A DNA stretch of 64,000 nt from Octopus sinensis (Eukaryota). Both the position numbers and the translations under genes were made by a program. Position 1 is the first letter of the stretch; each line of letters begins with the position of its first letter. The notes under the pieces are model-generated. The model did no database searches. It was not told the origin of the DNA and saw only the letters and a program-made list of their open reading frames with translations. Location: contig NC_043011.1 of NCBI RefSeq assembly GCF_006345805.1, positions 55,068,464-55,132,463 on the forward strand, in the 5' to 3' direction. Positions 15,751-41,052 of this stretch are shown one piece after another.

Positions 15751-15781
<31 letters not shown>

Positions 15782-16795: not shown

Positions 16796-17020
16796 TGCAA
16801 AAACAAATATATTTGTCTCCAGTTGATTTCTTGCATTCTTTTGCTTTCGCTTATTATTTCCAATTTCAGTATTTTTCTCAAAAATGATTTTTTCCTATTA
16901 AAAATTTCCTCTGATCTTACAAAAGTTACAAAGCAATTTTTTTTTTAAAAGCTGTCATGATAATGATGACGATGAGGATAATGATTGATTCCTATATACG
17001 TACTTATAATTTAGAAAGGG

Positions 17021-17923: not shown

Positions 17924-20339
17924 TATATATATAATATACTAAAACTATGATTCTACTGATGTATACATGTGTGTGTGTAGAAATATATATGTACTCGTCA
18001 TATACACCCAGATAATTCAGAGTATATATTTTATATGTGGCCCTACTTTTTTTTATCCTCTTCCTCCTGTTTTTTTTATTATTTTTGTTTCAGTATATTC
18101 ATGTCTGTCTCATTTCCGTTGACAATTATTGAAGGAAAATAAATATAAATAAAATGCTACATCCTCTGGTCTGTGGTTTGTTGCTAAACTTGTGTGAAAG
18201 GGGTTTTCATTTCATGCATTTTAATTGTATCTTATTTCATGTGTAATATCTAAAGTTCTCATGTCTTTTGTATTCTTTCTTGGTTCAATGCATTTTACTG
18301 GGAGGTCACTACACCGTTGTCCATTTTTCCTCTCTTCTAACATGTAACACCCGCTTGCAATATTTTTCTCTACTGATAAGCTCTTTTTATGTGAAACTAC
18401 TTCATGGAAAATACAAAAATAATTCTCTGTAAATTAAAATCTTAAACTTTTTTGAAAACATTGTTGACAAGCCCACTTCTTGTGTAGGAATATATATGCA
18501 GTGATGTGCGTTTGAACATATTTCATCATCATCATCATCGTTTAGCGTCCGCTTTCCATGCTAGCATGGGTTGGACGGTTCAACTGGGGTCTGTGAAGCC
18601 AGAAGGCTGCATCAGGCTTGTGTATATAAATGTATATCTTTATGTGTGACTATCTAAATACAAACACACATGGATGAATGTGAATGTGTGTGAAGGCATC
18701 TGTGATATCGTGACTGCTAACTTGTCACTTAAGTGCTGTTGCTTACACAGAGGAAAGAAATTATTTGAAGTATAAATAAGGATTTCTCTGTTAAAATGTG
18801 TTTTATTGTCTAATTTTAGAAGAGGTCAAAAAGGCTTTCTTTAGTATTTCTATGTCAATAGTTTGGATTAAGTTTCTTGTTCCATAACTTTCCAGCTACT
18901 ACAGAGTATTGATATTTGAGTAGATGATTGCTTCTTTAGATATTTACCAAATAAACATCAGGGGAAATCCTTTGGTCTTGTCAGTATGGAGTATTCATTG
19001 GAACATCATCAAAGTACATATTGTTTGGACTGAAAAATAGACAAAATGAAATTCAATCACCTCATGATATTACACACTGTATTTTTCCCACCAAAATCAA
19101 GTTAAATTTAGAGATTCATCATATAATGTACGATATTAAGTTGCAAAGATTTTCTCTGTCTGTTCTTAGTAAGAAAAAACACATTATTATTATTTATAAT
19201 TATATAAAAGTGACAAGCTGGCAGAATCGTTAACATGCCAGGCAAAATGCTTAGCAGCATTTCATGTCTTTCTGTTCTGAGTTCAAATTCTGCCATGGTC
19301 AACTTTGCCTTTCATCTTTTCAGGGTTGATAAATTAAGTTACCAGTGATACACTGGGACTGACCTAATCAACTAGTTCCCCCCTCCAAAATTTCATGCCT
19401 TGTGCCTAAAGTTAAAATTATCATCATCGTTTAGCGTCCGCTGGATGCCCTTCCTAACGCCAACCACTCCATGAGTGTAGTGGGTGCTTTTTACATGCCA
19501 CCGGCATGGGGTCCAAGCGAGGCTGGCAACGGCCACGATTGGATGGTGCTTTTTACGTGTCACCGGCACGAGGCCAGTCGGGGCGGCGCTGGCAACAGCC
19601 ACGTTCGGATACATGAAATTAAATATTAAAGACTAATATATTGGGTCATAATAGATGATCTCTCCTGTAACACTGCTTTCTACCTGGTATTAGAAGTGGT
19701 TTACTATCGTTAAGACCTCAAAATCAAGATGTATTTCATGTGTGCTTTTAGGATTTTTCAAACAGGTTTAGGACATTTTTTTTCTTATACTATAGTGAGG
19801 CAAGCAGAAGAGATGCTTGTTGGTTATGGAAAAAGAGAAAGGAGCTCAGCTGGAAAACAGGAGGGGATTAAGGGGTCAGGATCAAAATACCCAATGAACA
19901 GCCAACATTGTCTGATATCATCAGCTCCTTCTGACCAGGGCCACAGTCAGTATATGGCCCTTTATGTTCAAATCCTTCCAAGATAGTCTTTGCCTTTCTG
20001 CTTTCCAGGGTTAGAATAAATTAGCAATCAATCGACAGTGAATTCAGTGGCACGTGCCGTAAGTGCAAGTGTGAAGAGGCACAGAATTTATGACATTATT
20101 TTAGGTCTGCCTAATAGGGGATAATTAATTCTTTATGTTAATGTCATTAAGTAAGGTAATGAGTGTCAAAACAAATAATGAAAACAATTCAGCAGAGGAG
20201 TGTCAACAGTTTTCTAATTCTGCTGGCAAAGCAATGAACTAAAGCCTATCATATTTATTGATGACAGCAACCCACAGCAGACATAGATTAGTATTGGAGT
20301 CTTAGAACTATGCTCATCCTTCTCCAGGGTACCAAAGCC

Positions 20340-20391
20340 TTAAGACAGTACTAGGGATAGGGAGACCCAGAGGTGTCTTTCTACTGAGACA
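20340..20391 (-). CDS. Candidate terminal coding exon of the minus-strand membrane-protein gene (VSVERHLWVSLSLVLS*)
   Basis: Acceptor gtgttttcag; phase-2 reading reaches TAA at 20342-20340; AATAAA about 80 nt further downstream on minus. Confidence 0.4.
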
Positions 20392-21825
20392 CTGAAAACA
20401 CATGCTAAAACACCGTGTTTAACTTTGTAGCAGTAATTAAGAGAATTTATATTTGGCAAAAGATTCAGAGTAATGCATAATTAAATGTCCTTCTCGGGGA
20501 CATAAGAGGTTGAAACTCAAGATCCCCAAGTTGCTAGGATGATAATCTATCCACTTGGCTTCTTCAATAGCAACTCAATATAACAGCCATCTTTATAAAT
20601 TTCCCAATAGTGTTACTGGGATTGGAGACAATAAGGGTAGTTCACTCTGACTGATGCTTTTATGGGGCATCATTTTAGGGACTGCTATATGGGGGTGGGG
20701 ATGCAAAGGGAATAATTGATTATATTGACCTCTGGTACTTTTTATTTTAACAATCTCAGAAAGATGAATGGCAAATTTAAGCTCAGTGAGGTTTGCATTG
20801 AGAATATAAAGAGCAGGAATAAAAACTAAGATATTTTGTTTAGTGATTCTCATACTTGACTACCTTAACAGTTGGATGATTTGACTGTGGGCTGGCGAAC
20901 CAGATGGCTGCACCAGGCTCCAGTCTTGATCTGGCAGGGTTTCTACAGCTGGATGCCCTTCCTAACACCAACCACTCCGAGTGTGTAGTGGGTGCTTTTA
21001 CGTGCCACCGGCATGGGGGCCAGTCAGGCGGTACTGGCAAAGTTAAAATACAAAGAACTCTTTTGTATATAGTCATCATCATCATTCTTTGGGTCAGATG
21101 GAATTTGAGGAAGCAAATTTCTATGGCTGGTTCCTCTTCTTCTTGCTAACACTCACCTATTTCCAACTAAGATATTTTTATCCCATAACTGGGCATGTTT
21201 TCTCAGAAGACTGGAACGAACAGCATCATTTGTATCATAGTGATGCTACAACTAACATTTATGTCAAGACACACGTGCATACATATACATAAAAACTGGC
21301 CCTCGTGCTGGTGATATGTAAAAGCACCTACTACACTCTCGGAGTGGTTGGCGTTAGGAAGGGCATCCAGCTGTAGAAACTCTGCCAGATCAGATTGGAG
21401 TCTGGTTTGCCAGACCTCAGTCAAATCGTCCAACCCATGCTAGCATGGAAAGCAGACGTTAAATGATGATATGATAGGCGTCTTTCCGTTTCACTCTATG
21501 AAATCCACTCACAAGGCTTTGGTTGTCTCAGAGCTATTATAGAAGACTATTGAATACATTCAGCTGAGTGTATATCATGGATTAAGATCATTAATCACTG
21601 ATCTATAGCATGCTGCACCAACACCTTTGCTCCAAATTATTTCATAGCTTTTCATAAGAATTTCATTTTGTTTAGTTATGCTCCAAACTACAGCTAATTA
21701 ATGAAAGAGTTTATTTATTAAATCCCTTCAAATTCTTGATTATTTTCAAAGTTAATTGAAACATTCAGGTATTTCAAGAGAAATATGGTAATGGAAAAAG
21801 GAACGGAACCTAACAGAATACTTAC

Positions 21826-21870
21826 ACTGGCTTCCAAAGAAATGGATCCCTTCCTTGACGGAGAGCATGC
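21826..21870 (-). CDS. 45-nt phase 2-2 exon (HALRQGRDPFLWKP)
   Basis: Strong acceptor ctcctgtttcttttaatccag, donor GTAAGT, length a multiple of 3. Confidence 0.65.
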
Positions 21871-24714
21871 CTGGATTAAAAGAAACAGGAGAGTTTTATT
21901 TATTTATACACACAAACACACATAAAAGTCTCTTATTTTCCAGTGATTACAATTAATGTTGCCATTCTAATGATGGCTTCTACTGGAGAATCAGCAAGGA
22001 CCCCTCATTCTAACATTGAATCATAGTTTTATATTCTTTTTAATATGACTTCTTAAATTAATGTTTTTGTGTCTTCATATATAAATGCATAATTGCTCTT
22101 CGGTCCTGAGTTAATTGGCAATAAATTCATTTTATATATATAGTTTACTGTTCCATTAAGGTAGGATCAGTGACGCAAGCCACATCAGAGGAGTCTACCT
22201 CACCTCATGTCTCAATGAGTAGCTCTTATTTAAATAGTCTACATTAAATGATATATGTTTATATGGACATATATATATATATATACACATGTATTTTCAT
22301 ATATAATAGGATATAAACAATTTACATATTTATACACAAAAGAGGTGACCTTTGACAGAACACCTTATATGCTACAAAGGGCAGTTAAAGCCCAAACCAT
22401 GAATAAGACCAATTTCAAAGGGAATGAAAAAATATTTTTGTAGTTACCCTCAGACTCGAGTTTTTGTATCAATGTGCAGTGAGGGTGCAAAAATTAATGC
22501 ATATCTATACACCAAAGAACACCGAAAATACACGTGCTACACACTTTTACTTTATAATTTTCAAATCCACAGCACAAGCGCAGTTAACATTCAGCAGCAA
22601 ATAATAAAACAAATTATAAATGCATACCAGAAAGGCTTTGAAACTACGAAAATTTTACTGTGAAAATAATAAGGGTAGAAAATTTAGAAAAATTTGCATA
22701 CCGGTGGCTAGTATGCATAATAAAAGTCAATAGACTATGATGCATGCTAGCCACCAGTATGAAAATTTTTATAAATTTTCTACCCTTATTATTTTCACAG
22801 TATATACACATGTAATGTAATGTAACAGTCAAAGCCACTTACTATGAATACTCTGGGACCATTTTCACTCATTGCTGATAATATTAAGCAAACAGAGTCT
22901 GGGAGAATAATTTTGATAACAATAACTACTTCACAAGCTTCCTAATTATAACAACTCCCATTGTGTTACACCTACATTTATTAAACTGAAGTATTTTATT
23001 GTTAGACTAGCAGAGACACCCAGTGTTGCTCAGGTTTAAAACAGCATAGTTTGTATATTATACTACAGTCATGTTGAAACAGGTGATACAGGAATGCGCA
23101 GCATTGATGACAAAACATTTTGTGGAGTAAATGTTGCATAAATGACAATAGCAAGCCAATTTGGACAGAATTATCAATTTTATGAGAATGGGATGGATCT
23201 TATCTGAAAGCAACTCCAGGTGTTGTGAAGAAGGAATTTCTATGTGGTATGTTTCTGAGAGCTATTCTATTGGACCTCTGTGTAATCTGGTGTGCTAAAC
23301 ATTGTTTTACTGATTCAACATTAAGTGGTGCAGCATGGCCTTTGCTGATCTTGAGAAAGTCTCCCCTCCCTTCTGTCTTGAGACTCCATCTGACATGCTG
23401 CACCGTGCCTTTGCTGATGTTGAGAAAGTCTCAGGTCCCTTATCTCTTGAAACTTTCACCTTCAGTTTTCTGCACTCCTCCTTGCTTTACAGGTATTTCT
23501 GGAGAGATAATGTTTTTCCTTTGACTTTTTTTTTTCAATATTCTAAACAAAAAATTTTGTACGTAGGAAAAAATATACATTAATCTCTATTTTAGTAGGC
23601 AGTATAAATTAACCAAATATAAGCAAATTGTAAATACCTTACAATTGCTGCGATAATTATGAACTATAGATGTGTATTTTTATATAACTTGGACCTTCCA
23701 CGTAATTATTTTTTGTCAATAGTTTGTGTAGAGGTATGTGTGTATTTAATAACATAATAGATGATCTGCTTGGAGAAGGCAATTCAGTTCACTATAGAAT
23801 GATTCCTTTGTAACAATCAGCATGAAAAAGGTTGCAGCATTGATGCTAATGATGGTTGCACACTTGCTGTCTTGTACAAGCCAAACAGACATGATGTGAT
23901 CAGAGTGTCCAAAGGCCCTGAAGCTAGGAAACAGTGGCATTCTTTATCATAAAGCCAACTCTAGACAGCCTTCATTTATTCTTTAGCCTCTATATTGTGG
24001 TTTGTTTCTCTTTCACTTTCTTTTTCTGCAGCAGGCCAACCAGGTGGGGGTTGATGCAAGGTTAAGAAATTTTAATTTCTTATATATGTTGATGACATCC
24101 CATTTATAGGAATAGGGAAACAGAAATGGGATTATAACTGGCTTCCGTGCCAGTGGATCGTAAAAGGGCACCATTCGAGCATGATTGTTACCAACGTTGC
24201 CTTACTGGCACCTGTGCTGGTGGCATGTATAAAAGATTCGAGTGAGGTCGTTGCCAGTACTGCCTGACTGGCACGTAAAAAGCACCCACTACACTCTCAG
24301 AGTGGTTGGCATGAGGAAGGGCATCCATCAGCTGTAGAGACTCTGCCAAATCAAGATTGGAGCCTGGTGCAGCCATCTGGTTCGCCAGCCCTCAGTCAAA
24401 ATCGTCCAACCCATGCTAGCATGGAAAGCGGACGTTAAACGATGATGATGATTCATTTCCCAAAGTAATTTGTGGTCTCAGTGAAGCTGATACATCATGA
24501 AAACAAAATTCGTCTTGGCTTGCTATAGAGAGGAAGGTAGGGTTATAGAGTGGTATTAATGAAGAAGGACTAGTTTATATAATGAAAGTGTTAAGATGTA
24601 TAGAGAAACTCTATGAACCGAATGCAATATTAACATGAGCAATAATATTAATATGAGTCTGGATGAATAGAAAGAACAACAACAGCAATAAAGAATTGGA
24701 TTTTGCTTACTTAC

Positions 24715-24744
24715 ACATTGATTTCATCAAACTTGTATTTATCA
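24715..24744 (-). CDS. 30-nt phase 2-2 microexon (DKYKFDEIN)
   Basis: Strong acceptor ttttttctttctcttcag, donor GTAAGT; phase 0 would begin with TGA. Confidence 0.7.
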
Positions 24745-24974
24745 CTGAAGAGAAAGAAAAAACAGCAACAAAAATAAATCATTAAAGGTGAGTAAAATAA
24801 AGAAAACATTATTAAAGGTGAGTGAACTGCAATTTTGCATTAATGCGGATTTGTTTCTGTCTGATGGGATTTGATTAGATTTGTTCTGCACTCTGTCCCT
24901 CTCAAGTTATCTTAATCCTTTAATTTGAATTTGTAACCTTTCTAACTACATTATTAGGGTGGTTTAACCATCAT

Positions 24975-25160
24975 ATTAAGAGAATCTGGCTTCCAAACCC
25001 AAATTTCTGCTTTAGAGGTGGGTGCAAGAGGGTTTGTGGGCAAATCTGCTCATGATCTCATGAAATAGCTCTCAATTTCTATGAGAAAGAGAACTGGAAC
25101 TCTTAAGACAATGGCAGATGCAGCTGAGATGAGTTCCAACTGGATCTGGCCAAAAGGGAA
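24975..25160 (+). mobile_element. RLE-type non-LTR retrotransposon (HERO-like) C-terminal fragment
   Basis: LEVGARGFVGKSAHDLMK*LSISMRKRTGTLKTMADAAEMSSNWIW. Confidence 0.7.
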
Positions 25161-25587
25161 ATGCAAGATAACATCAAATGCATCATTTACCTTAAAGAGT
25201 ACTGTCCTTGTTTTGATTGTTAGAGTCCCAAAGTTGTGGAAGTTGGATGCTCTAGCATTCTCATGCTGCCTGTCATATTTGGTAATGTTCAGAGAATTTC
25301 AGACTAAACCCTTTCTTAAACTTACAAATACAGATTGCTCTCATTATCATAGAGCAAGTTTTCAAAGTCCAACATTTTTGCTGATTCTTTGATAACCTCC
25401 TTAGTTGGCCAAGCATTGAGATGACCACCACCTGGGAACCTCTAACTCATCAAAACAACTTTCAGACAAAGGCTAAATAAAAATTGGGCTCTAAGCACCA
25501 AATTCTTATCAATTAATTGTTCTATAGGATAATAGAATAACAAGCAGAGGGTTGCTTAAATGTCTCATGTTAAGTGCACTTGTTTAC

Positions 25588-25611
25588 CTAGGGAGTGTCA
25601 GGCAAGTTAAT
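25588..25611 (-). CDS. Candidate 24-nt phase 2-2 microexon (LTCLTLP)
   Basis: tatag acceptor, AG/GTAAAC donor, frame-preserving. Confidence 0.4.
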   Translation of the reverse strand: MNLPDTP

Positions 25612-26039
25612 CTATATAATGTATATAAATCATTTATATTTATAAAGCACCATCCGAACGTGGCCGACGCCAGTGCCGCCCTAACTGGCTTCCGTGTCGG
25701 TGGCACGTAAAAAGCACCAACCGATCTTGGCCGTTGCCAGCCTCCACTGGCATGTAAAAAGCACCCACTACACTCTTAGAGTGGTTGGCGTTAGAAGGGC
25801 ATGCAGCTGTAGAAACACTGCCGGATGAGACTGGAGCCTGGTACAGCCTCCTGGTTCCCAGACCCCGGTCAAACTGTCCAACCCATGCTAGCATGGAAAA
25901 CGGACGTTAAACGATGATGATGATGATGTTGTTCATATATATTCTTTTGCCAATCCACTAAGTTACAGGGATGGAAACACACCAACATCGGTTGTCAAGC
26001 GATGGTGGGTGGGTGGGTTAAACACAAACATAAATATAT

Positions 26040-27065
26040 ATGAATGGGAGGAGGAGAGCCTGCCAAATGTTGATCCAGTAGAGGGACCAGCTGTCTGAAC
26101 AGACAGCACCCTAGTAGATAAAGCAATTAAGGGTATGAAGCCAGGAAAAGCCCCTGGCCCATCAGGAATCACTGCTGAGATGCTTAAAACATCTGGTGGT
26201 GTGGGCTATGGTTAGTTACCTGTATTGTGAACCAGGTAGTTCATGATCGAGTCATACCCAATGACTGGCGTAGCAGCACCATAGTCGACTGCTATAAAAG
26301 TTTTGAATTCCTCTGTGATGCTTTAGATAGAAATAAGTACAGGGGTATCAAACTGCTGGATCAGATGATGATGGTCATAGCCCAACTAATTAGGGAGAGA
26401 GTCTGCTTAGATGATGTGAAGTTCGGTTTTGTGCCAGGTAGAAGCACCACTGATGCTATATTTCTGGTACAGCAACTGCAGGAGAAATACCTAACCAAAG
26501 ATAAACGCCTATATTTGGCTTTTGTGGACTTGGAGAAAGCCTTTGACAGGGTCCTCCAATCCCTTATCTGGTGGGTGATGCAGGAACTGGGGATTGACGA
26601 ATGGTTTAAGTGCTGTACAGGCCCTATACAGAGATACCGTTAATAGGGTTAGGATTCGAAATGAGTATAGTGAAGAATTCCAGGTAGAAGTAGGGATCCA
26701 CCAAGGATCAACCCTCAGCCCCCTCTTATTCATCATAGTCCTCCAGGCAATAACAGAGGAATTCAAGACAGGTTGCCCCTGGGAGCTCCTTCCTCTATGC
26801 TGATGACCTGGCCCTCATGTGGAAGCAAGGTTTAGAATCGAAGGGCCTTAGAGTCAATATTGCAAAGACCAAAGTTCTAGTAAGCAGGAAGGCAAACACA
26901 TCACAGACCCTTTCATGTAGGTGGCCCTGCTCGATCTGTAGAAAAGGCGTAGGTAGAAACTCCATAAGATGTACCCAGTGTAAGCTATGGACACATAAGA
27001 GGTGCTGAAACATCAAAGGAAGATTAACCAGGAAGATGGCTTTCATGTGCAGAGGGACGTGCATA
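26040..27065 (+). mobile_element. RTE-clade LINE RT fragment with C-terminal Cys-rich finger
   Basis: KAPGPSGITAEML, YRGIKLL, QFG-like KFGFVPGRSTTDAIF, AFVDLEKAFDRV, GIHQGSTLSPLLF, YADD, CSICRKGVGRNSIRCTQCKLWTHKRC; frameshifted. Confidence 0.9.
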
Positions 27066-27746
27066 GCTACTAACTCCTAGTATTGAAAGGAAAAGAAGAG
27101 AAAAGGGTCAATAGGAGCTGCAGGATGAGGTGCCCAAGCCAGCCCACAAGGCACAAGTGGGTGGGTGATTTGAGAAGTTGAATGGGGTGGACAAAAGGGG
27201 GAATAAGACAAGAGTTATGAGCTGGTGATGATGGAGGGATGCAGAGGAGTGGGGCAGAGAGGGAGCAGCAAATAGATGTAGTGAAGATGAAACAGTTACT
27301 GATGAGGAGAGGACAAGGAAGAAGGAAGAGGTGGACATAGACATGGAGCATGAGGGTGGTGAGTTTTGAAATACAGTAATCATCATCATCATCGTTTAAC
27401 ATCCGTTTTCCATGCTAGCATGGGTTGGACAGTTCGACTGGGGTCTGGGAAGGAGGCTGCACCAGGCACCAGTCTGATCTGGCAGTGTTTCTACAGCTGG
27501 ATGCCCTTCCTAACGCCAACCACTCCGTGAGTGTAGTGGGTGCTTTTTACGTGCCACCGGCACAGGGGCCAGAGAAGGCTGGCAAACGGCCACGATCAGT
27601 TGGTGCCTTTTATGTGCCACCGGCATGGACGCCAGTCAAGGCGGCGCTGGCATCGGCCATGTTCGGATGGTGTTTTTTTTTACGTGCCACCAGCACGGGT
27701 ATCACAACTAATGTGTAATGTGTAAACAATTTAAAAAACCACTTAC

Positions 27747-27815
27747 AGAGATGGATTCTCCCAGGCAATATTGTATCTTCTTTGTAGTATGGATGGCCTT
27801 GTGGAATCACCTTGT
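27747..27815 (-). CDS. 69-nt phase 2-2 exon (QGDSTRPSILQRRYNIAWENPS)
   Basis: Acceptor tttattattacag, donor GTAAGT; phase 0 is closed by TGA. Confidence 0.7.
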
Positions 27816-27885
27816 CTGTAATAATAAACATATACATACATACATACAGAGAGAGAGAGAGAAAGATAGATAGATAGAGAGAGAA

Positions 27886-27933
<48 letters not shown>

Positions 27934-28056
27934 GTAGAAAGTTCAGAAATGAGTGGCTGACATTACACTTGTTTTCCCATTCACACACAGAAACATGGGG
28001 ACAACAATAGCCACACCCATAAGTAACCAATCTTTACTTTTTGCTATTCTGACAAC

Positions 28057-28092
28057 CTGTCATGTGACTCAGTACATGGAGATAACATGTAA
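28057..28092 (-). CDS. Candidate 36-nt phase 2-2 microexon (YMLSPCTESHD)
   Basis: caacag acceptor, weak donor AG/GTTGTC; if that donor is skipped the frame reads on to a TAG. Confidence 0.3.
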
Positions 28093-29171
28093 CTGTTGAT
28101 GATAATACAGTAATACGATGCCTTCACAGGATTAACACAGCCTTAACTATCACAGCACTTATTCATTTGACACTAATAGGCAGACATCATGGAGAACTAA
28201 TCAAATGCTATACCTGAACTTGTAACCATCTTCAACCAACCAAATTGTAGCTTAATCCATAATTTCTTCATAAAAAATGGAATTTCCCAATTCCATCCAG
28301 AAAAAAATATAGTGTGTTCATTTGGCAAAAGAAAAAAAATCCTTGTCTGGTACCTGATCAATCCCAATGGTAGCCATGGAATGTGAAGGTGGGTGTGTGG
28401 GCCATGATTGTAATGTTGTGTATCATCTGCAGTGGGAACAGGGACAGTTTTCTCTATGAAGGCCTTTTTTCGTCTATTTACTGATATAGTGTCTTTATGA
28501 CCATTAAAGTCTATGGTGAAAAATTTAACCGTGCATGAATGAAAGTGGAAAGTTGCTGCATATGGTACTGTTAACGGAGGTTGAACAACATCGTTGCACA
28601 CAAAAACATGAGTCAAGAAGTAAAACTTCCTTCAAGGCAGAGCCAGAAATGCAATTGTCAAGTAGGGTAGAGGTTTTAAACAGAAGTGATATATTCAAAA
28701 TTGCTAAAACTAAAAATTGTCAAGGATAAATTAAATTTATTATTGTTACTGAATGTGTTAGTGTTATTTAATTTCTGAACAGTTTTGCTGCCATTTGTTT
28801 ATGAAGTTTCTACTAAGATAGAGACATGAGTAAAATTGATAATAGAGAAACAAAAATAAACTTTGGAAACAGCAGCAACGCCATAACTTACGTGGAAACC
28901 ATAAGCATGCTTTCAAGGGAGATGATCAGAGAAAGACTTGAAAATCAACGTAAGATCATAATACTTCATGTAAAGTAAATATAACAAATAATCCAGAATC
29001 CTTGTTTGGAACTGGATCAACTTCAAAATCTAATCAATCCATGCCAATCATGAGGCCAAACATCCCTGAAAGTTTCATCTGAATCCATCCAGTGGTTCTT
29101 GAGATATCTTGTCCATGAACAAACATACAAACACACACAATACCTCCACCTTCGCTAAGGGGCAGATGTAA

Positions 29172-29206
<35 letters not shown>

Positions 29207-29217
29207 ACAATACTTAC

Positions 29218-29295
29218 TGCTCCAGGCTGTCATCTGCTACAGACTTAACCACTGGATTTTCCCCTTGTAAATCTGGAACTGGTTTCTTAGGAGGG
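29218..29295 (-). CDS. 78-nt phase 2-2 exon (PPKKPVPDLQGENPVVKSVADDSLE)
   Basis: Acceptor gtgttttacag, donor GTAAGT; only the phase-2 frame is open. Confidence 0.75.
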
Positions 29296-30747
29296 CTGTA
29301 AAACACAATTGCTTACATAGATCAATTTAATAACATATTTGTCACCTTAATGTAAACATTTTACTTACTCAGGCCATCAATAACCCCTTTTCACTCTCCT
29401 CCACTTTGGGCTGTCATTCCTGCCTGTTTTGTAGCTCTTGTCTCAATATTCTGTCTCCAGTTATTTTCAAGGGGTCCTTTTTTCAATCTCCCTTGTCAGC
29501 CTCTCCTGCTGGTCACTTGACCTTACAGTTTCATTTTTGATTTTGCTGCCCCCATATTATAGGATTCATTGAGAGAAGGCTTTTCACTCCCTTATTTTGT
29601 TGGTTTTGAACTGTCATTCTATAGTTTTGCTTTTCTTTGGTTGGGATGTGACCCTAGGCAATTGAAGTTTCACGCTCGAATGGTGCCCTTTTAGGTGCCA
29701 CTGGCACGGAAGCCAGTTGGCTGCTCTGGCAACGATCACGCTCGAATAGTGCTCTTGGCACCCTACTAGCACGGGCACAAGTGCCAGTAAGGCAAGAATG
29801 AAACACATACATACACACACACTTAAATAAATCTACACCTGATTGTAGAAAAGACTGTTTCAAAGTTCAATTGTTTTGACAATAAGGGACTTTACACATT
29901 TTCCCCAAATCATCCATGTCATATGAATATAGAAAATGTGATGTGAACCATGAATAAAATTAAAATTTTTGAACTCTAGAATTAGGAGTTTACACAGATA
30001 AAGCTTCATTCTGCTCTGTTTTACTATCAAAGACATTTTAACCATGGATATCCTGACATCAATTCTAGTTTAGACAACATCATCCAATATATACCTTTTT
30101 CTAGAAGGTAGGATGGTGAAATTTCAGTGAAATTTGGTTGCTGTTTCTACCAAATCAACTAATGATTTCTTAGAGGCTTCCTTCTAAAATATTAATTTCT
30201 TACTCTGGGGAAAATGGAACCAACCCATGGTCAAACTAACCAACCAACCAAATCCTGGTTCATTTTTGCTGGTTTGTTCAAGTACCATCCGTACGTGGCC
30301 AATGCCAGCACCGCCTTGACTGGTTTCCATGTCGGTGGCACGTAAAAACCACCAACCAATCGTGGCCATTGCCAGCCTCTCCTGGCATCTGTGCAGGTGG
30401 CACGTAAAAAGCACCCACTACACTCACGGAGTGGTTGGCGTTAGGAAGGGCATCCAGCTGTAGAAACACTGCCAGATCAGACTGGAGCCTGGTGCAGCTC
30501 CCTGGCTTCCCAGACCCCGCTCAAACCATCCAACCCATGCTAGCATGGAAAACAGACGTTAAACAATGATGATGATGATGATGACACACACACATATTAA
30601 TCATTCAGCTAATGTTGTCTTTTCCTTACCACATAATTCTGTATAGTTTGATTTTTTATGTTCAATTCGTTAAATGTTCTAACACTGACCTGGCCATCAT
30701 TGTTTTGATTTTATAGAAAGGAATATTATGGGAAACTGAATATTTAC

Positions 30748-30816
30748 CAGTTTTCACTTTCCTTCACACAGTCTTTCCTGATTGTTTCATTGGCTGCCAC
30801 TTCCTCCTTCTGTCCA
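30748..30816 (-). CDS. 69-nt phase 2-2 exon (GQKEEVAANETIRKDCVKESEN)
   Basis: Acceptor taataatttcag, donor GTAAAT; only the phase-2 frame is open. Confidence 0.72.
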
Positions 30817-31821
30817 CTGAAATTATTAACAAACAGGTCAGTTGCCTGATGAAACATCACTCAAGCACTTGGCTCCCTACAAATATTCCTATAAAGTATC
30901 CTAAATGCAAACAAAGGAGGAGGAGGAGGAGGAGGAGGAAACAATGACAATGGCAACAACTTTTATTTAGGTCTTGGGTCCACAATACATGTTTTGTGGG
31001 GAAAAGGGTTTGGTCAGTTTAATTGATCCTCCCACTGCCCCTCCTCTACTCAACTTGTACTTACTTTATGGACACAGCACCCACCAAGTCATGAGTCAGG
31101 GGTTGTCAGAGTTTTTATCAAAACCAAAATCAAATTCGATGACTGGCGTCCGTGCTAGCAGGGTGCAAAGAGCACCATACGAGTGTGATCATTGACAGAG
31201 CGGCTAACCAGCTTCAGTGCCAGTGGCACATAAAAGGCACCATTCGAGCTTCATCGTTACCAGCGTCGCATTACTGGCACTTGAGCCCTGTGCTAGTAGG
31301 TTATTAACAGCACCATCCGAGCGTGATCGTTGCCAGAGCGGCTATCTGGCCTCCGTGCCGGTGGCACGTAAAAAACACCATTCGAGCATGATCGTTACCA
31401 GCATCGCCTTACTGGCACCTGTGCCGGTGGCATGTGTAAAAGATTCGAGTGAGGTCGTTGCCAGTACCGCCTGACTGGTCCCCGTGCCGGTGGCATGTAA
31501 AAGCACCCACTACACTCTCAGGGTGGTTGGTGTTAGGAAGGGCATTCAGCTGTATATCTTCTTAAAATTTCTGTTTGTTTCCATTAAGAACAAAATATTG
31601 TTCATTCAATGTAAAACAATGGCTCTACCTCAGTAAAGAACCATGGACATGTCTCCTCACTCTCCCATCCCCCTCTCTCTCCAGTATACCACATTAAATG
31701 ATTTCACTCACTGATATCTTGTGGAAGGAGATTTGTAGCTTGAAGCTAATGGGGGAAAACCTGAGAAAATAACAACCTGAAGCAATAATATAATTTGAGA
31801 GATAGAACTTCTTATACTCAC

Positions 31822-31881
31822 TTCAGAAGAAATGTTTGTGTTGAACAACTGTATTCACTGGAAGCCTCCCCATTTAGCTGT
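31822..31881 (-). CDS. 60-nt phase 2-2 exon (QLNGEASSEYSCSTQTFLL)
   Basis: Acceptor tttatttatttccag, donor GTGAGT; only the phase-2 frame is open. Confidence 0.75.
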
Positions 31882-31896
31882 CTGGAAATAAATAAA

Positions 31897-32270
31897 TCTC
31901 TATATATTTAAACGGCAAAATGTCTGTCTGTCTGTGTGTGTGTGTCCTTTATACAAATCCACAATTTTTCAGTTAGAGGGCTCGCACTTTCTGTGGTCAT
32001 TCAAAACCGTCCAAGGGTGGTCATGCACATCTTTACATTTCCCCAGTCACACCACAAAGCCATTAAAAAATCAATAGAAGTGACCTTTTTGTGAATTTTC
32101 TATCCAAAACCCAATCAAAATGCCCAAAACTTGATACACCAATTGAATGCCAGCTAGCTGTATGTGATTGGTTGGAGATTTGGACAGTACTCGCGTGTCT
32201 GTGCGCACGCACGCAGCTGTATATACATGCACTAGCACTATGACCTGGCAACGCTGGGTCATAGTGCTAA
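31897..32270 (+). mobile_element. Non-autonomous Helitron, copy 1
   Basis: A|TC start, 3' hairpin TAGCACTATGACC..GGTCATAGTGCTA, ends CTAA|T; about 90% similar to 41086-41457. Confidence 0.8.
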
Positions 32271-32494
32271 TTAAAGATAATTGGATATCAAATGTGAGAG
32301 TATATTTGTTTCAAATGACTTTGTAAAAAGCACCCACTACACTCATGGAGTGGTTGGTGTTAGGAAGGGCATCCAGCTGTAGAAACTCTGCCTGATCAGA
32401 CTGGAGCCTGGTGCAGCCTCCTGGCTGCCCAGACCCCGGTTGAACTGTCCAGCCCATGCTAGCATGGAAAACAGACGTTAAACGATGATGATGA

Positions 32495-33356
32495 AAGTGC
32501 AGGATGTGCTCTGAGAAGGGAGAAAGAATAATCCATATTGTTAGTGAGTGCTGTAAGCTTGCACAACATGAATACAAAAGGAGACGCGACAATGTGGCCA
32601 GATATGCTCACTGGCTGTTGCGCAGTAAAGCAAACTTCAAGAAAGCCGAACAACGGTATGAACACAAGCCAGAAAGAGTAATGGAACATTACAAAAACAT
32701 CACAAAATACTGCGAGATTTTATCATGCAGTGAGACCAAGTCATAGAGGCGAGATGGCCAGATATCATGATCATCCATAAAGATGAAAAAGAAGTAAAGA
32801 TTATAGATGTTGCAATATCAGGTAATTTGAGGGTGAAATGTAAGGAAACAGAAAAGATTGAGAAATACCAGCCACTGCAGGATGAGATAGGAAAGTTATG
32901 AGACATGAGGAAATTAATGGTGATACCAGTGGTAATTGGAGCATTAGGAGCAGTTTCCAAGAGCTTTGAAAAACATTTTAAGAATATTGGAGGTGCTGTC
33001 AGGCTCAAGGTGATCCAGAAGACAGCATTGTTGGGTATAGCTCGCATTCTAAGGAGAATATTGTCTCTTTGAGTCACAGGAGAAGGGACTTCTTGAAACC
33101 TTTGGTGATTTGTTATTGCCTGCTTTCAAGAAAAGAACAACCGCAAATAGAACAGTGAGAAACAAAACAACAACAACAACAATAATAATAGAGCTCCTAC
33201 AGAAAGTTTGCCTCTCAGGGACAGCATGGATTATCAAGAGGGTTCTAAGCACTTGAAAGGCTGCTAAAAACTTGTGGACACGTAAGGTTACAAGTAGTAA
33301 CATAAATCCTACCTGGAATAAGACCAAACTTGAGCTTTGTTTCCATAATAATAATA
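32495..33356 (+). mobile_element. Two tandem R4/Dong-like LINE 3' ends (CCHC knuckle + PD-(D/E)xK endonuclease)
   Basis: CSEKGERIIHIVSEC, RWPDIMII..EVKIIDVAI, PVVIGALG, IQKTALLGIARILRR, then an (AAC/AAT)n tail; a second LQKVCL.GTAWIIKRVL end with its own (AAT)n tail. Confidence 0.8.
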
Positions 33357-33795
33357 ATAATTGTCAAAAAATAATTGTCAAATAATAATTGTCAAATAAT
33401 AATTGCCAAAAAGTAATTGTCAAATAATAATTGCCAAAAAATAATTGTCAAATAATAATTGCCAAAAAATAATTGTCAAATAATAATTGTCAAAAAATAA
33501 TTGTCAAATAATAATTGCCAAAAAATAATTGACAAATAATAATTGTCAAAAAGTAATTGTCAAATAATAATTGCCAAAAAATAATTGTCAAATAATAATT
33601 GGCAAAAAATAATTGTCAAATAATAATTGCCAAAAAATAATTGACAAATAATAATTGTCAAAAAGTAATTGTCAAATAATAATTGCCAAAAAATAATTGT
33701 CAAATAATAATTGCAAAAAATAATTGTCAAATAATAATTGCCAAAAAATAATTGACAAATAATAATTGTCAAATAATAATTTTCAAATAATAATT
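33357..33795. repeat. Minisatellite of alternating 14/15-bp units (ATAATTGTCAAATA / ATAATTGCCAAAAAA)
   Basis: About 30 tandem units read directly. Confidence 0.95.
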
Positions 33796-33865
33796 AAAAT
33801 TAAGAACCTTAACTTTTGTGAAGATTTTGTGAAAGAAACTAATAGAATTTCAAATTAATTTTTAC

Positions 33866-33934
33866 CTGTTTGAAGTTTCCGTGAATGTTTGATTGGTGAA
33901 GTTGTAGTTTTGGGCATTTTGCTTGAATCCCAGA
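33866..33934 (-). CDS. 69-nt phase 2-2 exon (LGFKQNAQNYNFTNQTFTETSN)
   Basis: Acceptor tttattttatatttctag, donor AG/GTAAAA; phase matches the end of the TM exon. Confidence 0.72.
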
Positions 33935-34548
33935 CTAGAAATATAAAATAAATGCCATAAGTGACAAGCTAAGGACAATCAGTTTTAACTAACTATATTT
34001 TGTAAAATTTATTATATTACTGTGACTGAGAGGACCCGGCAAATAAAGTCAGTCCACAGCTGTAACCTACACCAGTGTCACATAACCAGCCCACTCAAAA
34101 GTACCTTGGATTGTAGGGTGACGTGCCGTGCTTAAGGAGGCTCTATGAAGTCAAGTACATCAACATCAACAGCAATATCAAAATCAAATCAAATGGAAAT
34201 TATGGTTGTGAGCCCTGTGCTGGTAGCACGTAAAAAGTACCCACTACACTCTCAGAGTGGTTGGTGTTAGGAAGGGCATCCAGCTGTAGAAACACTGCCA
34301 GCTCAGATTGGGGCCCGGTGCAGCTTCCTGGCTTCCCAGGCCCCAGTCAAACCGTCCAACCCATGCCAGCATAGAAAACGGACGTTAAATGATGATGATG
34401 ATGATACGAGCTGAAGTAGCCATGGAAATTCCACAAGTGATAAATGGTTGATTTATTGTTCATTACTGGATGGAAATATATATATTTACAGGGAGGAATT
34501 GAGAATAGAATATATGTTCCACTTCATCATTTAATTGATAATAAAATA

Positions 34549-35400
34549 TACAGAGTGTTCAGGCTAAATTTGCATCAAAGGGGAAAAAAATAAAATATCC
34601 CAACCAAAAGTGAAAGTATTTTAAAAATTCAAAACATATGAACTAGATTATGGTTGGGAGATAAGTTTACTGCAAGTAACCACTCTCAGCTTTCACCATG
34701 TCCTCAAGACAGCTCTGGAACCTGGTGCAAGCATTCTTCACTGTGTCCCTGGGAAGATCTTCAAACCCCTCCTTGACTTTGGCCACCATCTCAGCCTTGG
34801 TGTTTCAAATAGTGTGGTTAATGTTGTTCCCGACAGTGTCCCACACATAAGTAACCCATGGAATTACAATCAGGGTGTATTAGGAGGCTGGGAGAGTCAG
34901 ATTTCTCTGACAGCCACTTCTGACGCTTTCTAGAAGTATAGCAAGGAGTTGAGTCCTGCTGCCACACATATGGCCTACCAGTGGCAACCCTCTCCAGCCA
35001 GAGTTTCACTATAGTCTCCAGCAGCTTCACATTACCTAAGGCTCTGTTCACTAGTTGGACGGTTTCTGGCAGATGCAGTCAGAATGCCTGCTGTGTCCCT
35101 TCCTGTAGCTTCGTAGTCTCCATTGCAACTGTCCATGTCATGTCTTACAGTCTTTACAGTATTCAGAACACTGAACAGCAGTCATGGTGTCAGTATTTTG
35201 ACACCTGGCATCAGTCATCACGATACAGGTAACTCTCTTCCAGTCCTCTATGTTCAGCTAACTTTTTCTCAACTACAACTTTGAACATGTCAAGCCCTAC
35301 AATCTCAATGTGCTGGATCTGCCCACAACCAGAACACATGACAACCCAAAGACTGTGGCTAAAGTGCATCCAAGAAACTGACTCTATCAGATTTATCAAG
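34549..35400 (-). mobile_element. Decayed Tc1/mariner (maT/DD37D-like) transposon
   Basis: TA|CAGAGTG end; minus translation GRPYVWQQDSTPCYTSRKRQKWLSE..PDCN...YLC. Confidence 0.75.
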
Positions 35401-36671
35401 ATTTATCTCCGACATAATGAAATTAAAACATATTTTACAGTCACACATGTCTCACGTTTCTTCTGCATTTCAGTGTATTATCTTGTTTGGAAATAGGTGT
35501 GGGTTAGCAACAAGTTATCCTGATATAGAAAATCTGTCTCAGTACAATCTGTTTGACTCATGCAAGCATGGAAAAGTGAATATTAAATAATGATGACAAC
35601 GACAATGACCACCACCACCATGAACCATCCTTTCATAAGGTGAAAAGTGTAATTTGAAAGCAATTTGGATGCTGTTTCTAACAAATCAAATAATCACATA
35701 TAAGTGCTCTCATTAACTTTTGTGTAATTTCCTGGTAAAATATCTTAGCTATATACGGGCCTGATGAAGAAATTACATAAATAAGTTCATTCGAACCTAT
35801 TTCTTGAATTGTTGCCCAACTAAAATTAAATCTTTTCTGTCTCTCTTATCTTTTACATTGGTTTGTGGATCTGCTGTAACAACTTATCTGTAATATTTTT
35901 TTCAGTTCTTTCTCGCAGACTATAATATTTGACAACAAATTGCATTTATCGCATTTTGCTCTTACAATGAAAGAAATAATAAAATAATAGTTAAAACTCT
36001 TCCAGTACCATTTATATTTATTGTCAAGAACAATGGAATGGTGGAAAAATCAGAAAAGTTAAGCACTTTAAAACATATAATGTTGACGTCCTTCATCCAT
36101 AGGCCCAGGAACAGGGGATGTGCTTGCAACTCCTAAAATATTTTGGCCATCAAAAAAAAATCTTTTGAACATTCTGGGTTGGATCTGGGTTTGCACCCAC
36201 TAGGCAATTTTCTCTCCCACACATTTGTGCCCTTCTTAATATTGTCATTATTTAGTTTCATCTTTGATAAATTAAGTACAGTCATGTATACAATTCTTAC
36301 GTTCTAATATAATTTACATTCCTACCTGGGACACATTGCAACAATCTAATTTGAGACCAGTACTTGACTGGCTGAGACATTATTTCACTGACCCCAAAAG
36401 GATGAAAGGTGAGCTTAATCTTGGCGGAATTAGAACACAACGTGTAAATGGCCAAAACTGAGCCCCTACCATAAGATATTTCCCATCTTTCCTAACTAAA
36501 ACTGTGGGGGCCTCACCACCCTCAGAAATTAATAAACCATGAAAGGGAAAAAATGACTAACTTCTTCTGTTGTGAATAGGCATGTGAAAATTCCAATGAT
36601 ACAATTTTATTCCCTCTTATAAATCCGAAATTTTGTGTCTGTTCAGAAAACCAAACCCTTTGCACACTTAC

Positions 36672-36822
36672 CCCTTTTCTTGTTCCGGCTTTCCTGTACG
36701 CTTTTTTACCTTAACAATAGTAAATATGAAGACTGCAAGGAGCAAAGCGAAGATTATCCCAACACATAGACCAATGATTAAGTTTCTCTTGTCGAAAGAC
36801 TCTTCTTCTTCTATTTCGGAAA
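36672..36822 (-). CDS. Transmembrane exon of a type I membrane protein (SEIEEEESFDKRNLIIGLCVGIIFALLLAVFIFTIVKVKKRTGKPEQEK)
   Basis: Acceptor tttttgttgcag, donor GTAAGT; about 23-residue hydrophobic helix followed by a KVKKR stop-transfer cluster; phase 1 to 2. Confidence 0.85.
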
Positions 36823-40578: not shown

Positions 40579-40939
40579 GTTTGTGTGTCTGTGTTTGTCT
40601 CCCCAACATCGCTTGACAACCGATGCTGGTGTGTTTACGTCCCTGTAACTTACCGGTTTGGCAAAAGAGACCGATAAAATAAGTACTAGGTTTACAAAGA
40701 ATAAGTCCTGGGGGGCGATTTGCTCGACTAAAGGTGGTGCTCCAGCATGGCCACAGTCAAATGACTGAAACAAGCAAAAGAGTATATATCATATTTTAAA
40801 AAATGAATTGCTGTTAAAAATATAATACTTCTTAAAAGAGAAACTTACACAAACAAGTGGCGTTTGTTGACCATAATTTGTTTGATAAACATGTGAGTGT
40901 TCTCTCTCCTTCAAGAACATATGGATATGGACAGCTTAC

Positions 40940-41052
40940 GTTTACTTTGGTACCAACATGGATGTTATAATTACTCAGTCGTAATATGTGTGCATTCTCT
41001 TCAGTTATAATTTGTGGATTTTCTGTCAGATTGTTCAGTGGAGGGCAGCCAT
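40940..41052 (-). CDS. Exon encoding the first half of a Sushi/CCP-like module (GCPPLNNLTENPQIITEENAHILRLSNYNIHVGTKVN)
   Basis: Acceptor tatttttctctttcag, donor GTAAGC, phase 1 to 0; CPPL....VGT.V pattern resembles a CCP N-half (judged by eye). Confidence 0.65.

What the first reader, a model, noticed from the sequence alone, without database searches (positions are those of the whole stretch)
20340..36822. Hidden receptor gene whose cytoplasmic tail is built from an array of symmetric phase-2 mini/micro-exons
Seen: downstream of a clear TM exon that ends in phase 2, AG/GT-bounded minus-strand exons of 69, 60, 69, 78, (36), 69, (24), 30, (30 at 22869-22898) and 45 nt follow, all multiples of 3 and all open in phase 2. 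For the 60-, 69- (30816) and 78-nt exons, phase 2 is the only open frame, which is hard to get by chance. None appears in the ORF track. The tail is disordered-looking and carries several tyrosines (NYNF, EYSC, HYML, RYNI, KYKF). Known: equal-phase exons can be skipped in any combination without frameshift. Inference: a lineage-specific signalling or immune receptor whose intracellular motif content could be diversified combinatorially by splicing.
Basis: partly seen in the sequence, partly recalled or inferred. Interest (0 to 1): 0.75.

Follow-up and report, generated by a model that had tools for sequence, protein, structure and literature searches.

The report
Octopus sushi-receptor gene with mini-exon tail

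Summary
The seven unbracketed exons are real.

- **Gene:** minus strand, 48447-18981, 11 coding exons: a tiny ATG exon, one Sushi/CCP exon, one TM exon, then 69/60/69/78/69/30/45-nt exons (all phase 2-2) and a terminal exon.
- **Bracketed exons:** the three bracketed exons, and the "HYML" tyrosine, are not supported.
- **Chance:** Homology validates the exons.
- **Conservation:** O. bimaculoides has identical exon lengths. Argonauta has 72/60/78/66/30/45. Limpet, abalone, scallop and a freshwater mussel all have TM exon → four phase-2 symmetric exons, ending in an invariant 45-nt exon (…GRDPFLWRP…). The layout is therefore ancestral.
- **Family:** it spans molluscs plus a brachiopod, and members start directly at the Sushi domain with no signal peptide.
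- **Splicing:** gene models skip the 30-nt exon (two species), the 60+69-nt exons and the 45-nt exon. This is modular splicing at model level only; no reads were examined.
- **Immune motifs:** the tail has no ITIM, ITAM or ITSM motif.

The parts
48429..48447 (-). Coding exon 1 (19 nt): ATG + MFQEDI, ends in phase 1, donor gtaaga
   Evidence: Exact match to the N-terminus of XP_036365653.1. The spliced translation was verified. The same exon is present in O. vulgaris and O. bimaculoides.
40849..41052 (-). Exon 2 (204 nt, phase 1->1): single Sushi/CCP domain with 4 Cys, an invariant Trp and 3 N-glycosylation sequons
   Evidence: Sequence read. Pfam Sushi scores 21.4 bits against a cut-off of 20.7. 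AF2 pLDDT is 91-97. Foldseek hits are nearly all CCP modules. Nucleotide identity to Argonauta is 77%.
36672..36822 (-). Exon 3 (151 nt, phase 1->2): acidic juxtamembrane stretch, TM helix LIIGLCVGIIFALLLAVFIFTIV, basic stop-transfer KVKKRTGK
   Evidence: AF2 predicts a helix at residues 83-117 with pLDDT about 96.
33866..33934 (-). Exon 4 (69 nt, phase 2->2): LGFKQNAQNYNFTNQTFTETSN
   Evidence: It is 69 nt in O. bimaculoides and 72 nt in Argonauta. Its positional equivalent is the 57-75-nt phase-2 exon of other molluscs.
31822..31881 (-). Exon 5 (60 nt, phase 2->2, only open frame): RQLNGEASSEYSCSTQTFLL; skipped in the O. vulgaris model
30748..30816 (-). Exon 6 (69 nt, phase 2->2, only open frame): NGQKEEVAANETIRKDCVKESEN; skipped in the O. 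vulgaris model, with no counterpart found in Argonauta
29218..29295 (-). Exon 7 (78 nt, phase 2->2, only open frame): CPPKKPVPDLQGENPVVKSVADDSLEQ
   Evidence: It is 78 nt in O. bimaculoides and Argonauta.
27747..27815 (-). Exon 8 (69 nt, phase 2->2): QGDSTRPSILQRRYNIAWENPSL; an internal AG acceptor gives a 33-nt version in the O. vulgaris model
   Evidence: It is 66 nt in Argonauta.
24715..24744 (-). Exon 9 (30 nt micro-exon, phase 2->2): DKYKFDEINV; cassette exon skipped in isoform X2 of two species; read-through of its donor (GT|g taa) would give isoform X3
   Evidence: Nucleotide identity to Argonauta is 92%.
21826..21870 (-). Exon 10 (45 nt, phase 2->2): HALRQGRDPFLWKP, the family's signature motif; exon length is 45 nt in every mollusc checked; skipped in the O. 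vulgaris and Mytilus trossulus models
   Evidence: AF2 shows a local pLDDT rise to 77.
18981..19029 (-).

Best explanation
**Shown**
- The finding is the tail-encoding part of a genuine, already annotated but functionally uncharacterised gene. It matches O. sinensis LOC118766363 and its O. bimaculoides orthologue LOC106881043.
- The product is a small (280 aa) single-pass membrane protein. It has a few residues after the Met, one Sushi/CCP domain, an acidic stalk, a TM helix and a roughly 169-aa disordered cytoplasmic tail.
- The tail ends in a conserved ...F/INxxALRxGRDPFLW(R/K)P... motif.
- The tail is encoded by seven symmetric phase-2 exons plus a terminal exon.
- This phase layout is not an octopus invention. 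Gastropods and bivalves have TM exon (phase 1->2), then four symmetric phase-2 exons (about 57-75 [246 in Pecten], 258-312, 57-63 and 45 nt), then a terminal exon.
- In cephalopods the large central exon and the 57-nt exon correspond to five smaller exons.

**Inferred**
- Any exon split or inserted inside a run of phase-2 introns must itself be 2-2 to keep the frame. The uniform phase is therefore largely an inherited constraint.
- The constraint has a useful by-product: individual tail segments can be dropped without a frameshift.
- Gene models indicate a limited set of such events: a 30-nt cassette, skipping of the 60+69-nt exons, skipping of the 45-nt exon, an alternative acceptor, and an early stop by donor read-through.
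- These events would change which short linear motifs the tail offers to cytosolic partners. In particular they change the presence of the conserved GRDPFLW segment.
- The N-terminal Sushi domain is probably exposed outside the cell without a cleavable signal peptide (type III topology), with the TM helix acting as a reverse signal anchor.
- The ligand and the pathway are unknown.
For: - The spliced translation equals XP_036365653.1 exactly.
- Exon lengths and phases are identical in O. bimaculoides. Argonauta hians has the same organisation: 72/60/78/66/30/45 nt.
- All 11 exons lie in the 49% of the locus that aligns to O. bimaculoides.
- Phase-2 symmetric tail exons with an invariant 45-nt exon occur in Lottia, Haliotis, Pecten and Sinanodonta.
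- The family spans bivalves, gastropods, cephalopods and Lingula, and every member is annotated 'uncharacterized'.
- Isoforms: X2 lacks exactly DKYKFDEINV in two species, and X3 ends ...EINV, as donor read-through predicts.
- The O. vulgaris model joins E4-E7, uses a 33-nt E8 and joins E9-E11.
- Mytilus models differ by exactly the 15-aa RALLHNRDPFLWRPV segment.
- Sushi is above the Pfam threshold and matches 19 of 20 relatives. AF2 and Foldseek support a CCP fold, a TM helix and a disordered tail.
- Members start M-x(1-8)-C. One assembled transcript (L007) has an in-frame TAA three codons upstream of the ATG.
Against: - No RNA reads were available here. All splicing evidence consists of gene models from annotation pipelines, and the O. 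vulgaris and Mytilus skips are seen only across species or pipelines.
- It cannot be resolved whether the cephalopod mini-exons arose by intron gain, exon insertion or duplication. E4/E5 similarity is marginal (shuffle p about 0.05).
- Exon 6 has no detectable Argonauta counterpart.
- Type III topology is inferred, not shown. An unannotated upstream signal-peptide exon in octopus cannot be formally excluded, because the frame upstream of the ATG is open within the genomic ORF.
- The function of the DPF/NxxY-like motifs is speculation.
Confidence: 0.8

Rival explanations
1. One reading: the exon array exists in order to generate many tail isoforms combinatorially. Exons would be included independently, in a tissue- or stimulus-specific way, diversifying the signalling-motif content of an immune or signalling receptor.
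For: - All seven internal tail exons are 2-2 symmetric, so any subset is frame-preserving.
- At least four different skipping or alternative-site events appear in gene models.
- Cephalopods have more and smaller exons than other molluscs.
Against: - Only three RefSeq isoforms exist per species, and they differ at one exon (E9).
- Phase symmetry predates the cephalopod exon multiplication, so it needs no adaptive explanation.
- No ITIM, ITAM or ITSM motifs are present.
- No expression or read data were available.
Confidence: 0.12
2. The tail exons are spliced constitutively. The annotated variants (X2, X3, the O. vulgaris short model, the Mytilus 45-nt skip) would be low-level splicing noise or annotation artefacts. 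The symmetric phase would be purely historical.
For: - The phase pattern is ancestral.
- The skips of E5/E6/E10 are each seen in a single model from one pipeline.
- Micro-exons are often missed by gene predictors, which would mimic skipping.
Against: - The same E9-minus isoform is annotated independently in two Octopus species.
- Loss of exactly the 45-nt exon recurs in models of Octopus and Mytilus.
Confidence: 0.25
3. The exon-like segments are chance AG...GT open stretches in AT-rich, repeat-filled intronic DNA. There would be no gene.
For: The formal criterion is met equally often on the control strand: 48 against 53. The three bracketed candidates do appear to be of this chance kind.
Against: - There is an exact 280/280 match to an annotated protein.
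- Orthologues with the same exon chain exist in four cephalopods.
- Protein-level conservation extends to bivalves and gastropods.
- A relative's single assembled transcript carries Sushi, TM, tail and GRDPFLW in one ORF.
Confidence: 0.01
4. The protein is a distant orthologue of the vertebrate MYCT1/SUSD3 group. Its tail would then function like theirs.
For: - A sub-threshold Pfam Myc_target_1 match covers the TM helix and tail (E 3e-5, 24.5 bits against a cut-off of 31.1).
- The architecture resembles SUSD3: one Sushi domain, a TM segment and a cytoplasmic tail (PMC11968365).
Against: - Only 1 of 20 family members gives that Pfam match.
- Among the hits whose source was looked up, two profile searches returned only mollusc or brachiopod single-Sushi relatives.
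- TM-plus-low-complexity matches are typically spurious.
Confidence: 0.07

Closest known systems
RefSeq gene models LOC118766363 (Octopus sinensis; XP_036365653.1/54.1/55.1) and LOC106881043 (O. bimaculoides; XP_014786733-35)
   Same: This is the same gene. Isoform X1 is reproduced exactly from the window, and X2 and X3 are explained by E9 skipping and by read-through of the E9 donor.
   Different: Nothing differs structurally. The records carry no function, no family name and no comment on exon phase.
PECAM-1/CD31 cytoplasmic domain (exons 9-16), the classic tail built from many short, alternatively spliced exons
   Same: Both are single-pass receptors whose cytoplasmic domain is encoded by a series of short exons. 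Alternative splicing of those exons yields isoforms with different motif content and behaviour (PMC2132561).
   Different: The two are not homologous. PECAM-1 has an Ig-domain ectodomain and tyrosine motifs that recruit SH2 phosphatases. The octopus tail has no ITIM or ITSM, and its ectodomain is a single Sushi domain without a signal peptide.
Vertebrate small single-Sushi membrane proteins (SUSD3, also SUSD6)
   Same: The overall architecture matches: one Sushi domain, a TM helix and a cytoplasmic tail on a cell-surface protein (PMC11968365).
   Different: No sequence relationship was detected beyond the Sushi domain. Apart from the two cephalopod queries, all 18 single-Sushi hits whose source was looked up are mollusc or Lingula proteins or unnamed assembled transcripts. 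The GRDPFLW motif was not looked for in vertebrate proteins. SUSD3 exon phases were not examined.
Animal micro-exon programmes (short, frame-preserving exons that tune protein-interaction surfaces)
   Same: E9 (30 nt) and E10 (45 nt) are short, symmetric exons in a disordered region, and they appear as cassettes in gene models. Short conserved alternative exons are discussed for bilaterians, including O. bimaculoides, in bioRxiv 10.64898/2026.09.05.749416.
   Different: Tissue specificity and regulation are unknown here. Most exons of this array (60-78 nt) are mini-exons rather than micro-exons.

Membership tests
Sushi/CCP/SCR domain proteins (PF00084) | Pfam model score above the gathering threshold | tested here: met
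   Octopus scores 21.4 bits and Argonauta 22.6 bits against a cut-off of 20.7. 19 of 20 family members match, with a best E-value of 1e-9.
Sushi/CCP/SCR domain proteins (PF00084) | Four conserved cysteines, an invariant tryptophan and a beta-sandwich CCP fold | tested here: met
   C9, C47, C61 and C73 are nearly invariant or invariant, and W67 is invariant, in the 20-sequence alignment. AF2 pLDDT exceeds 90 with four strands. Foldseek top hits are almost all CCP modules (C4BP, CR2, beta2-GPI, factor H, CD55, CD46) at probability about 1.0, but with weak E-values of 2e-3 to 3e-2.
Single-pass type I membrane receptor | Cleavable N-terminal signal peptide | tested here: not met
   The protein starts MFQEDID-GC..., and relatives start M-x(1-8)-C. 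Transcript L007 has an in-frame stop three codons upstream of the ATG. The data point to type III (signal-anchor, N-out) topology instead, which is inferred and not shown.
Single-pass type I membrane receptor | One hydrophobic TM helix followed by basic residues | tested here: met
   LIIGLCVGIIFALLLAVFIFTIV is followed by KVKKRTGK. AF2 predicts a helix at residues 83-117.
Immunoreceptors signalling through tyrosine motifs (ITIM/ITSM/ITAM) | At least one [SIVL]xYxx[IVL], TxYxx[VI] or YxxL/I-x6-12-YxxL/I in the tail | tested here: not met
   A regex scan of the X1 tail finds none. It also finds no YxxPhi, NPxY or PPxY. Only DPF (residue 258) and NxxY (residues 267 and 277) are present.
Myc_target_1 (PF15179; MYCT1-like) | Pfam score above gathering, and a match shared by relatives | tested here: not met
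   The score is 24.5 bits against a cut-off of 31.1, and only 1 of 20 family members matches.
Modular, alternatively spliced cytoplasmic tails (PECAM-1-like organisation; a functional class, not a homology family) | Tail encoded by several short exons | tested here: met
   There are seven internal exons of 30-78 nt plus a terminal exon.
Modular, alternatively spliced cytoplasmic tails (PECAM-1-like organisation; a functional class, not a homology family) | Experimentally observed isoforms that differ by tail exons | tested here: inconclusive
   Only predicted isoforms and gene models are available: X2, X3, the O. vulgaris model and the Mytilus models. No reads were accessible.
Mollusc/brachiopod signal-less Sushi-TM family with a C-terminal GRDPFLW motif (unnamed; defined here) | Architecture M-x(1-8)-C-Sushi, TM, low-complexity tail, ALRxGRDPFLW(R/K)P motif on a 45-nt phase-2 exon | tested here: met
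   See the alignment and the exon maps.

The most novel reading that the evidence does not exclude
This would be an unrecognised, lophotrochozoan-wide family of signal-peptide-less (type III) Sushi receptors. Its cytoplasmic tail would have been kept in an all-phase-2 exon organisation for more than 500 million years because regulated exon choice controls which docking motifs the receptor displays. That choice would include on/off switching of the invariant 45-nt GRDPFLW exon, seen skipped in both Octopus and Mytilus models. The system would have been expanded into a finer-grained exon array in cephalopods.
Probability: 0.15. Interest if true: 0.55.

Novelty: new member of a known kind. Interest (0 to 1): 0.3.

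Why it matters
- **For the scan:** an unaided reader can recover real 30-78-nt exons that ORF tracks miss (7 of 7 unbracketed calls were correct). The stated rule alone has no specificity, and the weaker bracketed calls were wrong.
- **For biology:** the gene belongs to a conserved but entirely uncharacterised mollusc and brachiopod family. Three features are testable:
  - a Sushi ectodomain apparently exported without a signal peptide;
  - an invariant C-terminal GRDPFLW motif carried on a length-invariant 45-nt exon;
  - a tail whose exon phases have stayed uniform across molluscan classes.
- **If regulated:** exon choice would make this an invertebrate counterpart of modular receptor tails such as that of PECAM-1.
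- **If not regulated:** it is a clean example of intron-phase constraint shaping how exons are subdivided.

Tried and rejected
1. **Wrong 78-nt exon.** My first guess (28092-28015) contains a stop. The real exon is 29295-29218.
2. **MYCT1/SUSD3 homology.** The sub-threshold Pfam hit was rejected because only 1 of 20 relatives matches.
3. **Argonauta exon 6.** A search with blastn, tblastn and a splice-site scan found only a low-complexity E/K-rich stretch.
4. **Exon duplication as the origin of the array.** Pairwise exon comparisons against shuffles are at best marginal. E4/E5 share a Yx4QTF pattern with p about 0.05 before multiple-test correction. The two nucleotide 'hits' are short and AT-rich.
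5. **Second profile search through the word-indexed database.** It returned only 7 proteins and no non-mollusc names.
6. **Lingula and Saccostrea loci.** These could not be fetched, so exon phases outside Mollusca remain untested.
7. **RNA scans of the window.** Rfam and tRNA scans found nothing.
8. **Upstream 424-aa ORF.** Pfam and PDB sequence searches found nothing.
9. **First spliced-mapping script.** It failed on Argonauta and was replaced by diagonal-block mapping.
Full report
**What is in the sequence**

The window is AT-rich (about 26-46% GC), repeat-laden eukaryotic DNA.

On the minus strand, 36822-36672 is a textbook transmembrane exon. Its acceptor is ttgttgcag and its donor is gtaagt. 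It encodes an acidic stalk, a 23-residue hydrophobic helix and a basic stop-transfer segment. It ends with two bases of a split codon, i.e. phase 2.

Upstream, at 41052-40849, lies a phase 1-1 exon encoding a Sushi/CCP domain.

**Identity of the gene**

That query hit, at 100% identity, 'uncharacterized protein LOC118766363' isoforms X1 and X3 of Octopus sinensis. It also hit an O. vulgaris model at 99% and an Argonauta hians orthologue at 54%.

Splicing eleven minus-strand segments reproduces isoform X1 (280 aa) exactly, with a canonical AG at all ten acceptors and GT at all ten donors:

| Exon | Window coordinates | Length (nt) | Phase |
|---|---|---|---|
| E1 | 48447-48429 | 19 | 0->1 |
| E2 (Sushi) | 41052-40849 | 204 | 1->1 |
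| E3 (TM) | 36822-36672 | 151 | 1->2 |
| E4 | 33934-33866 | 69 | 2->2 |
| E5 | 31881-31822 | 60 | 2->2 |
| E6 | 30816-30748 | 69 | 2->2 |
| E7 | 29295-29218 | 78 | 2->2 |
| E8 | 27815-27747 | 69 | 2->2 |
| E9 | 24744-24715 | 30 | 2->2 |
| E10 | 21870-21826 | 45 | 2->2 |
| E11 | 19029-18981 | 49 (incl. stop) | 2->0 |

The window is most likely O. sinensis. Its protein is identical to the O. sinensis record, whereas the O. vulgaris model differs (for example NAQNYNF against NTQNYNF), and exon-plus-flank nucleotide identity to the O. vulgaris locus is 90-100%.

**Check of the observation**

For the 60-, 69- (30816) and 78-nt exons, phase 2 is the only open frame.

The three bracketed exons are in no model:
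- The '(36)' exon is most likely the 39-nt candidate 28092-28054, the only source of 'HYML'. In O. bimaculoides its AG acceptor is AA, and there is a 1-nt indel.
- The best 24-nt candidate does not align to O. bimaculoides.
- 22898-22869 lies in sequence with no O. bimaculoides counterpart. By contrast, all 11 real exons lie in the 49% of the locus that aligns.

With the same moderate splice-site filters it gives 53 hits on the gene strand and 48 on the control strand. What makes the exons real is identity to annotated proteins and conservation, not the rule.

**Conservation of the exon architecture**

The table gives the symmetric phase-2 tail exons of each species in order. The first three columns are grouped by position, not by strict exon-to-exon homology; the cephalopod E8 overlaps the region of the 57-63-nt exon of other molluscs. 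Each gene then ends in a short terminal exon (phase 2->0).

| Species | After the TM exon | Central region | Before the 45-nt exon | 45-nt exon |
|---|---|---|---|---|
| O. sinensis (window) | 69 | 60, 69, 78, 69 | 30 | 45 |
| O. bimaculoides | 69 | 60, 69, 78, 69 | 30 | 45 |
| Argonauta hians | 72 | 60, 78, 66 (no exon-6 counterpart) | 30 | 45 |
| Lottia | 63 | 300 | 57 | 45 |
| Haliotis | 57 | 312 | 57 | 45 |
| Pecten | 246 | 291 | 57 | 45 |
| Sinanodonta | 75 | 258 | 63 | 45 |

- In the non-cephalopod molluscs the order is Sushi exon (ending in phase 1), TM exon (phase 1->2), four symmetric phase-2 exons, then a short terminal exon.
- The 45-nt exon, encoding ...ALRxGRDPFLW(R/K)P..., has the same length in every species examined.
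- The all-phase-2 tail is therefore ancestral to at least conchiferan molluscs.
- Cephalopods have five smaller exons where other molluscs have the large central exon plus the 57-nt exon.
- Within a run of phase-2 introns, any new or subdivided exon must be 2-2 to keep the frame. The uniformity therefore needs no special adaptive explanation. This step is inference.
- A test for exon duplication was at best marginal.

**What the protein is**

- *Ectodomain:* Pfam finds Sushi just above threshold, and it matches 19 of 20 relatives.
- *Structure:* AlphaFold2 run on the family alignment gives a confident CCP domain (pLDDT 91-97) and a TM helix (residues 83-117). The tail is low-confidence (41-60) except around residues 250-260, the conserved motif, where pLDDT reaches 77.
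- *Fold matches:* Foldseek matches are almost all complement-control-protein modules.
- *Family range:* an exhaustive HMMER search found many multi-Sushi proteins plus a set of 200-420-aa proteins that align across the Sushi domain and TM helix. Many of these also carry the C-terminal motif. They come from Mytilus, Saccostrea, Crassostrea, Pecten, Mactra, Mya, Dreissena, Sinanodonta, Lottia, Haliotis, Babylonia, Lymnaea and the brachiopod Lingula. All are annotated 'uncharacterized'.
- *N-terminus:* nearly all members start M-x(1-8)-C, i.e. directly at the first Sushi cysteine, with no signal peptide. An assembled transcript of a relative (L007) has an in-frame TAA three codons before its ATG.
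- *Topology (inferred):* with basic residues after the helix and N-glycosylation sequons in the N-terminal part, a type III (N-out, signal-anchor) topology is the best reading.
- *Rejected match:* a sub-threshold Myc_target_1 match is not shared by relatives and is rejected.
- *Tail motifs:* the tail has no ITIM, ITSM, ITAM, YxxPhi, NPxY or PPxY. It has DPF (inside GRDPFLW) and two NxxY. The 'immune receptor with tyrosine motifs' reading is not supported.

**Alternative splicing**

- RefSeq lists three isoforms in each of O. sinensis and O. bimaculoides:
  - X1 includes all exons.
  - X2 lacks exactly the 30-nt exon E9.
  - X3 ends ...EINV. This is what read-through of the E9 donor gives (AAT GT|g taa -> V, stop).
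- The O. vulgaris model joins E4 to E7, skipping the 60- and 69-nt exons. It uses an internal AG in E8, giving a 33-nt exon, and joins E9 to E11, skipping the 45-nt exon. Every junction stays in frame.
- Mytilus models differ by exactly the 15 residues of the 45-nt exon.
- These are annotation-level observations. I could not examine reads.
- They support a modest, modular use of the symmetric exons. They do not support, and do not exclude, true combinatorial diversification.

**Comparison with what is known**

- The gene itself is already in public annotation.
- Functionally, the closest known arrangement is PECAM-1. [quoted passage not shown] The two are not homologous, and the octopus tail lacks PECAM-1's motifs.
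- By architecture it resembles small vertebrate single-Sushi membrane proteins such as SUSD3 (PMC11968365). I detected no sequence relationship beyond the Sushi domain.

**Verdict**

It is wrong on 'hidden', on 'lineage-specific' and on the immune-motif reading.

This is a new, uncharacterised member of a known kind of organisation. Two mildly interesting family-level features emerged: signal-less Sushi export, and a length-invariant 45-nt motif exon that appears optional in two distant molluscs.

Interest: 0.3.

Noticed in passing
window 61787-63058 (-): A 424-codon open frame, probably the last exon of the upstream neighbouring gene. It ends in a cysteine-rich repeated module (...CxAIGxFRIVPGSTVWCQINCANNYCPTTHCGCQ). 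It has no Pfam or PDB sequence match. In O. vulgaris a 384-aa gene product sits at the equivalent upstream position (L003 1-2421).
   Followed up: partly
window 5897-34405, e.g. 9835-10024, 25748-25931, 27379-27572, 30380-30600, 32323-32494, 34215-34405: A roughly 190-bp interspersed (SINE-like) repeat gives about 20 HSPs in the window (roughly 15 copies) at 80-92% identity, on both strands. Many copies sit inside the introns of this gene. Copies of the same element also occur in the Argonauta locus. No tRNA or Rfam match was found.
   Followed up: partly
window 26227-26643 (+) and 3851-4318 (+): Reverse-transcriptase (RVT_1) fragments. The first lies inside intron 8 of the gene on the opposite strand, with E 2.9e-8. 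It explains the GC and skew bump at 26-28 kb.
   Followed up: partly
family-wide; transcript L007 153-164: Members of this Sushi-TM family begin M-x(1-8)-C with no signal peptide. L007 has an in-frame TAA three codons upstream of the ATG. A folded, disulfide-bonded Sushi domain exported by a reverse signal anchor would be unusual and is worth a topology experiment.
   Followed up: partly
Mytilus proteins P0037 vs P0153/P0151: The models differ by exactly RALLHNRDPFLWRPV, the 45-nt exon. This mirrors the skip of octopus E10 in the O. vulgaris model.
   Followed up: partly
L001 14352-16718 (Argonauta intron): No counterpart of octopus exon 6 (69 nt) is detectable. The exon may be an Octopus-lineage gain or an Argonauta loss.
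   Followed up: partly
window 34818-35051 (-) and 59999-60314 (-): These open frames read like Tc1/mariner-type transposase remnants (...WQQDSTPCYTSRK......VWQDFTPCYTTRR...). That is by eye only; the first frame and a frame overlapping the second (60185-60667) gave no Pfam hit at E<=0.01.
   Followed up: partly
window 15728-16826; 38110-38570; 52011-52408; 55055-55487: Long microsatellite and low-complexity tracts (TG/TA-rich, CT-rich and trinucleotide runs) create many spurious long ORFs in the ORF track.
   Followed up: no
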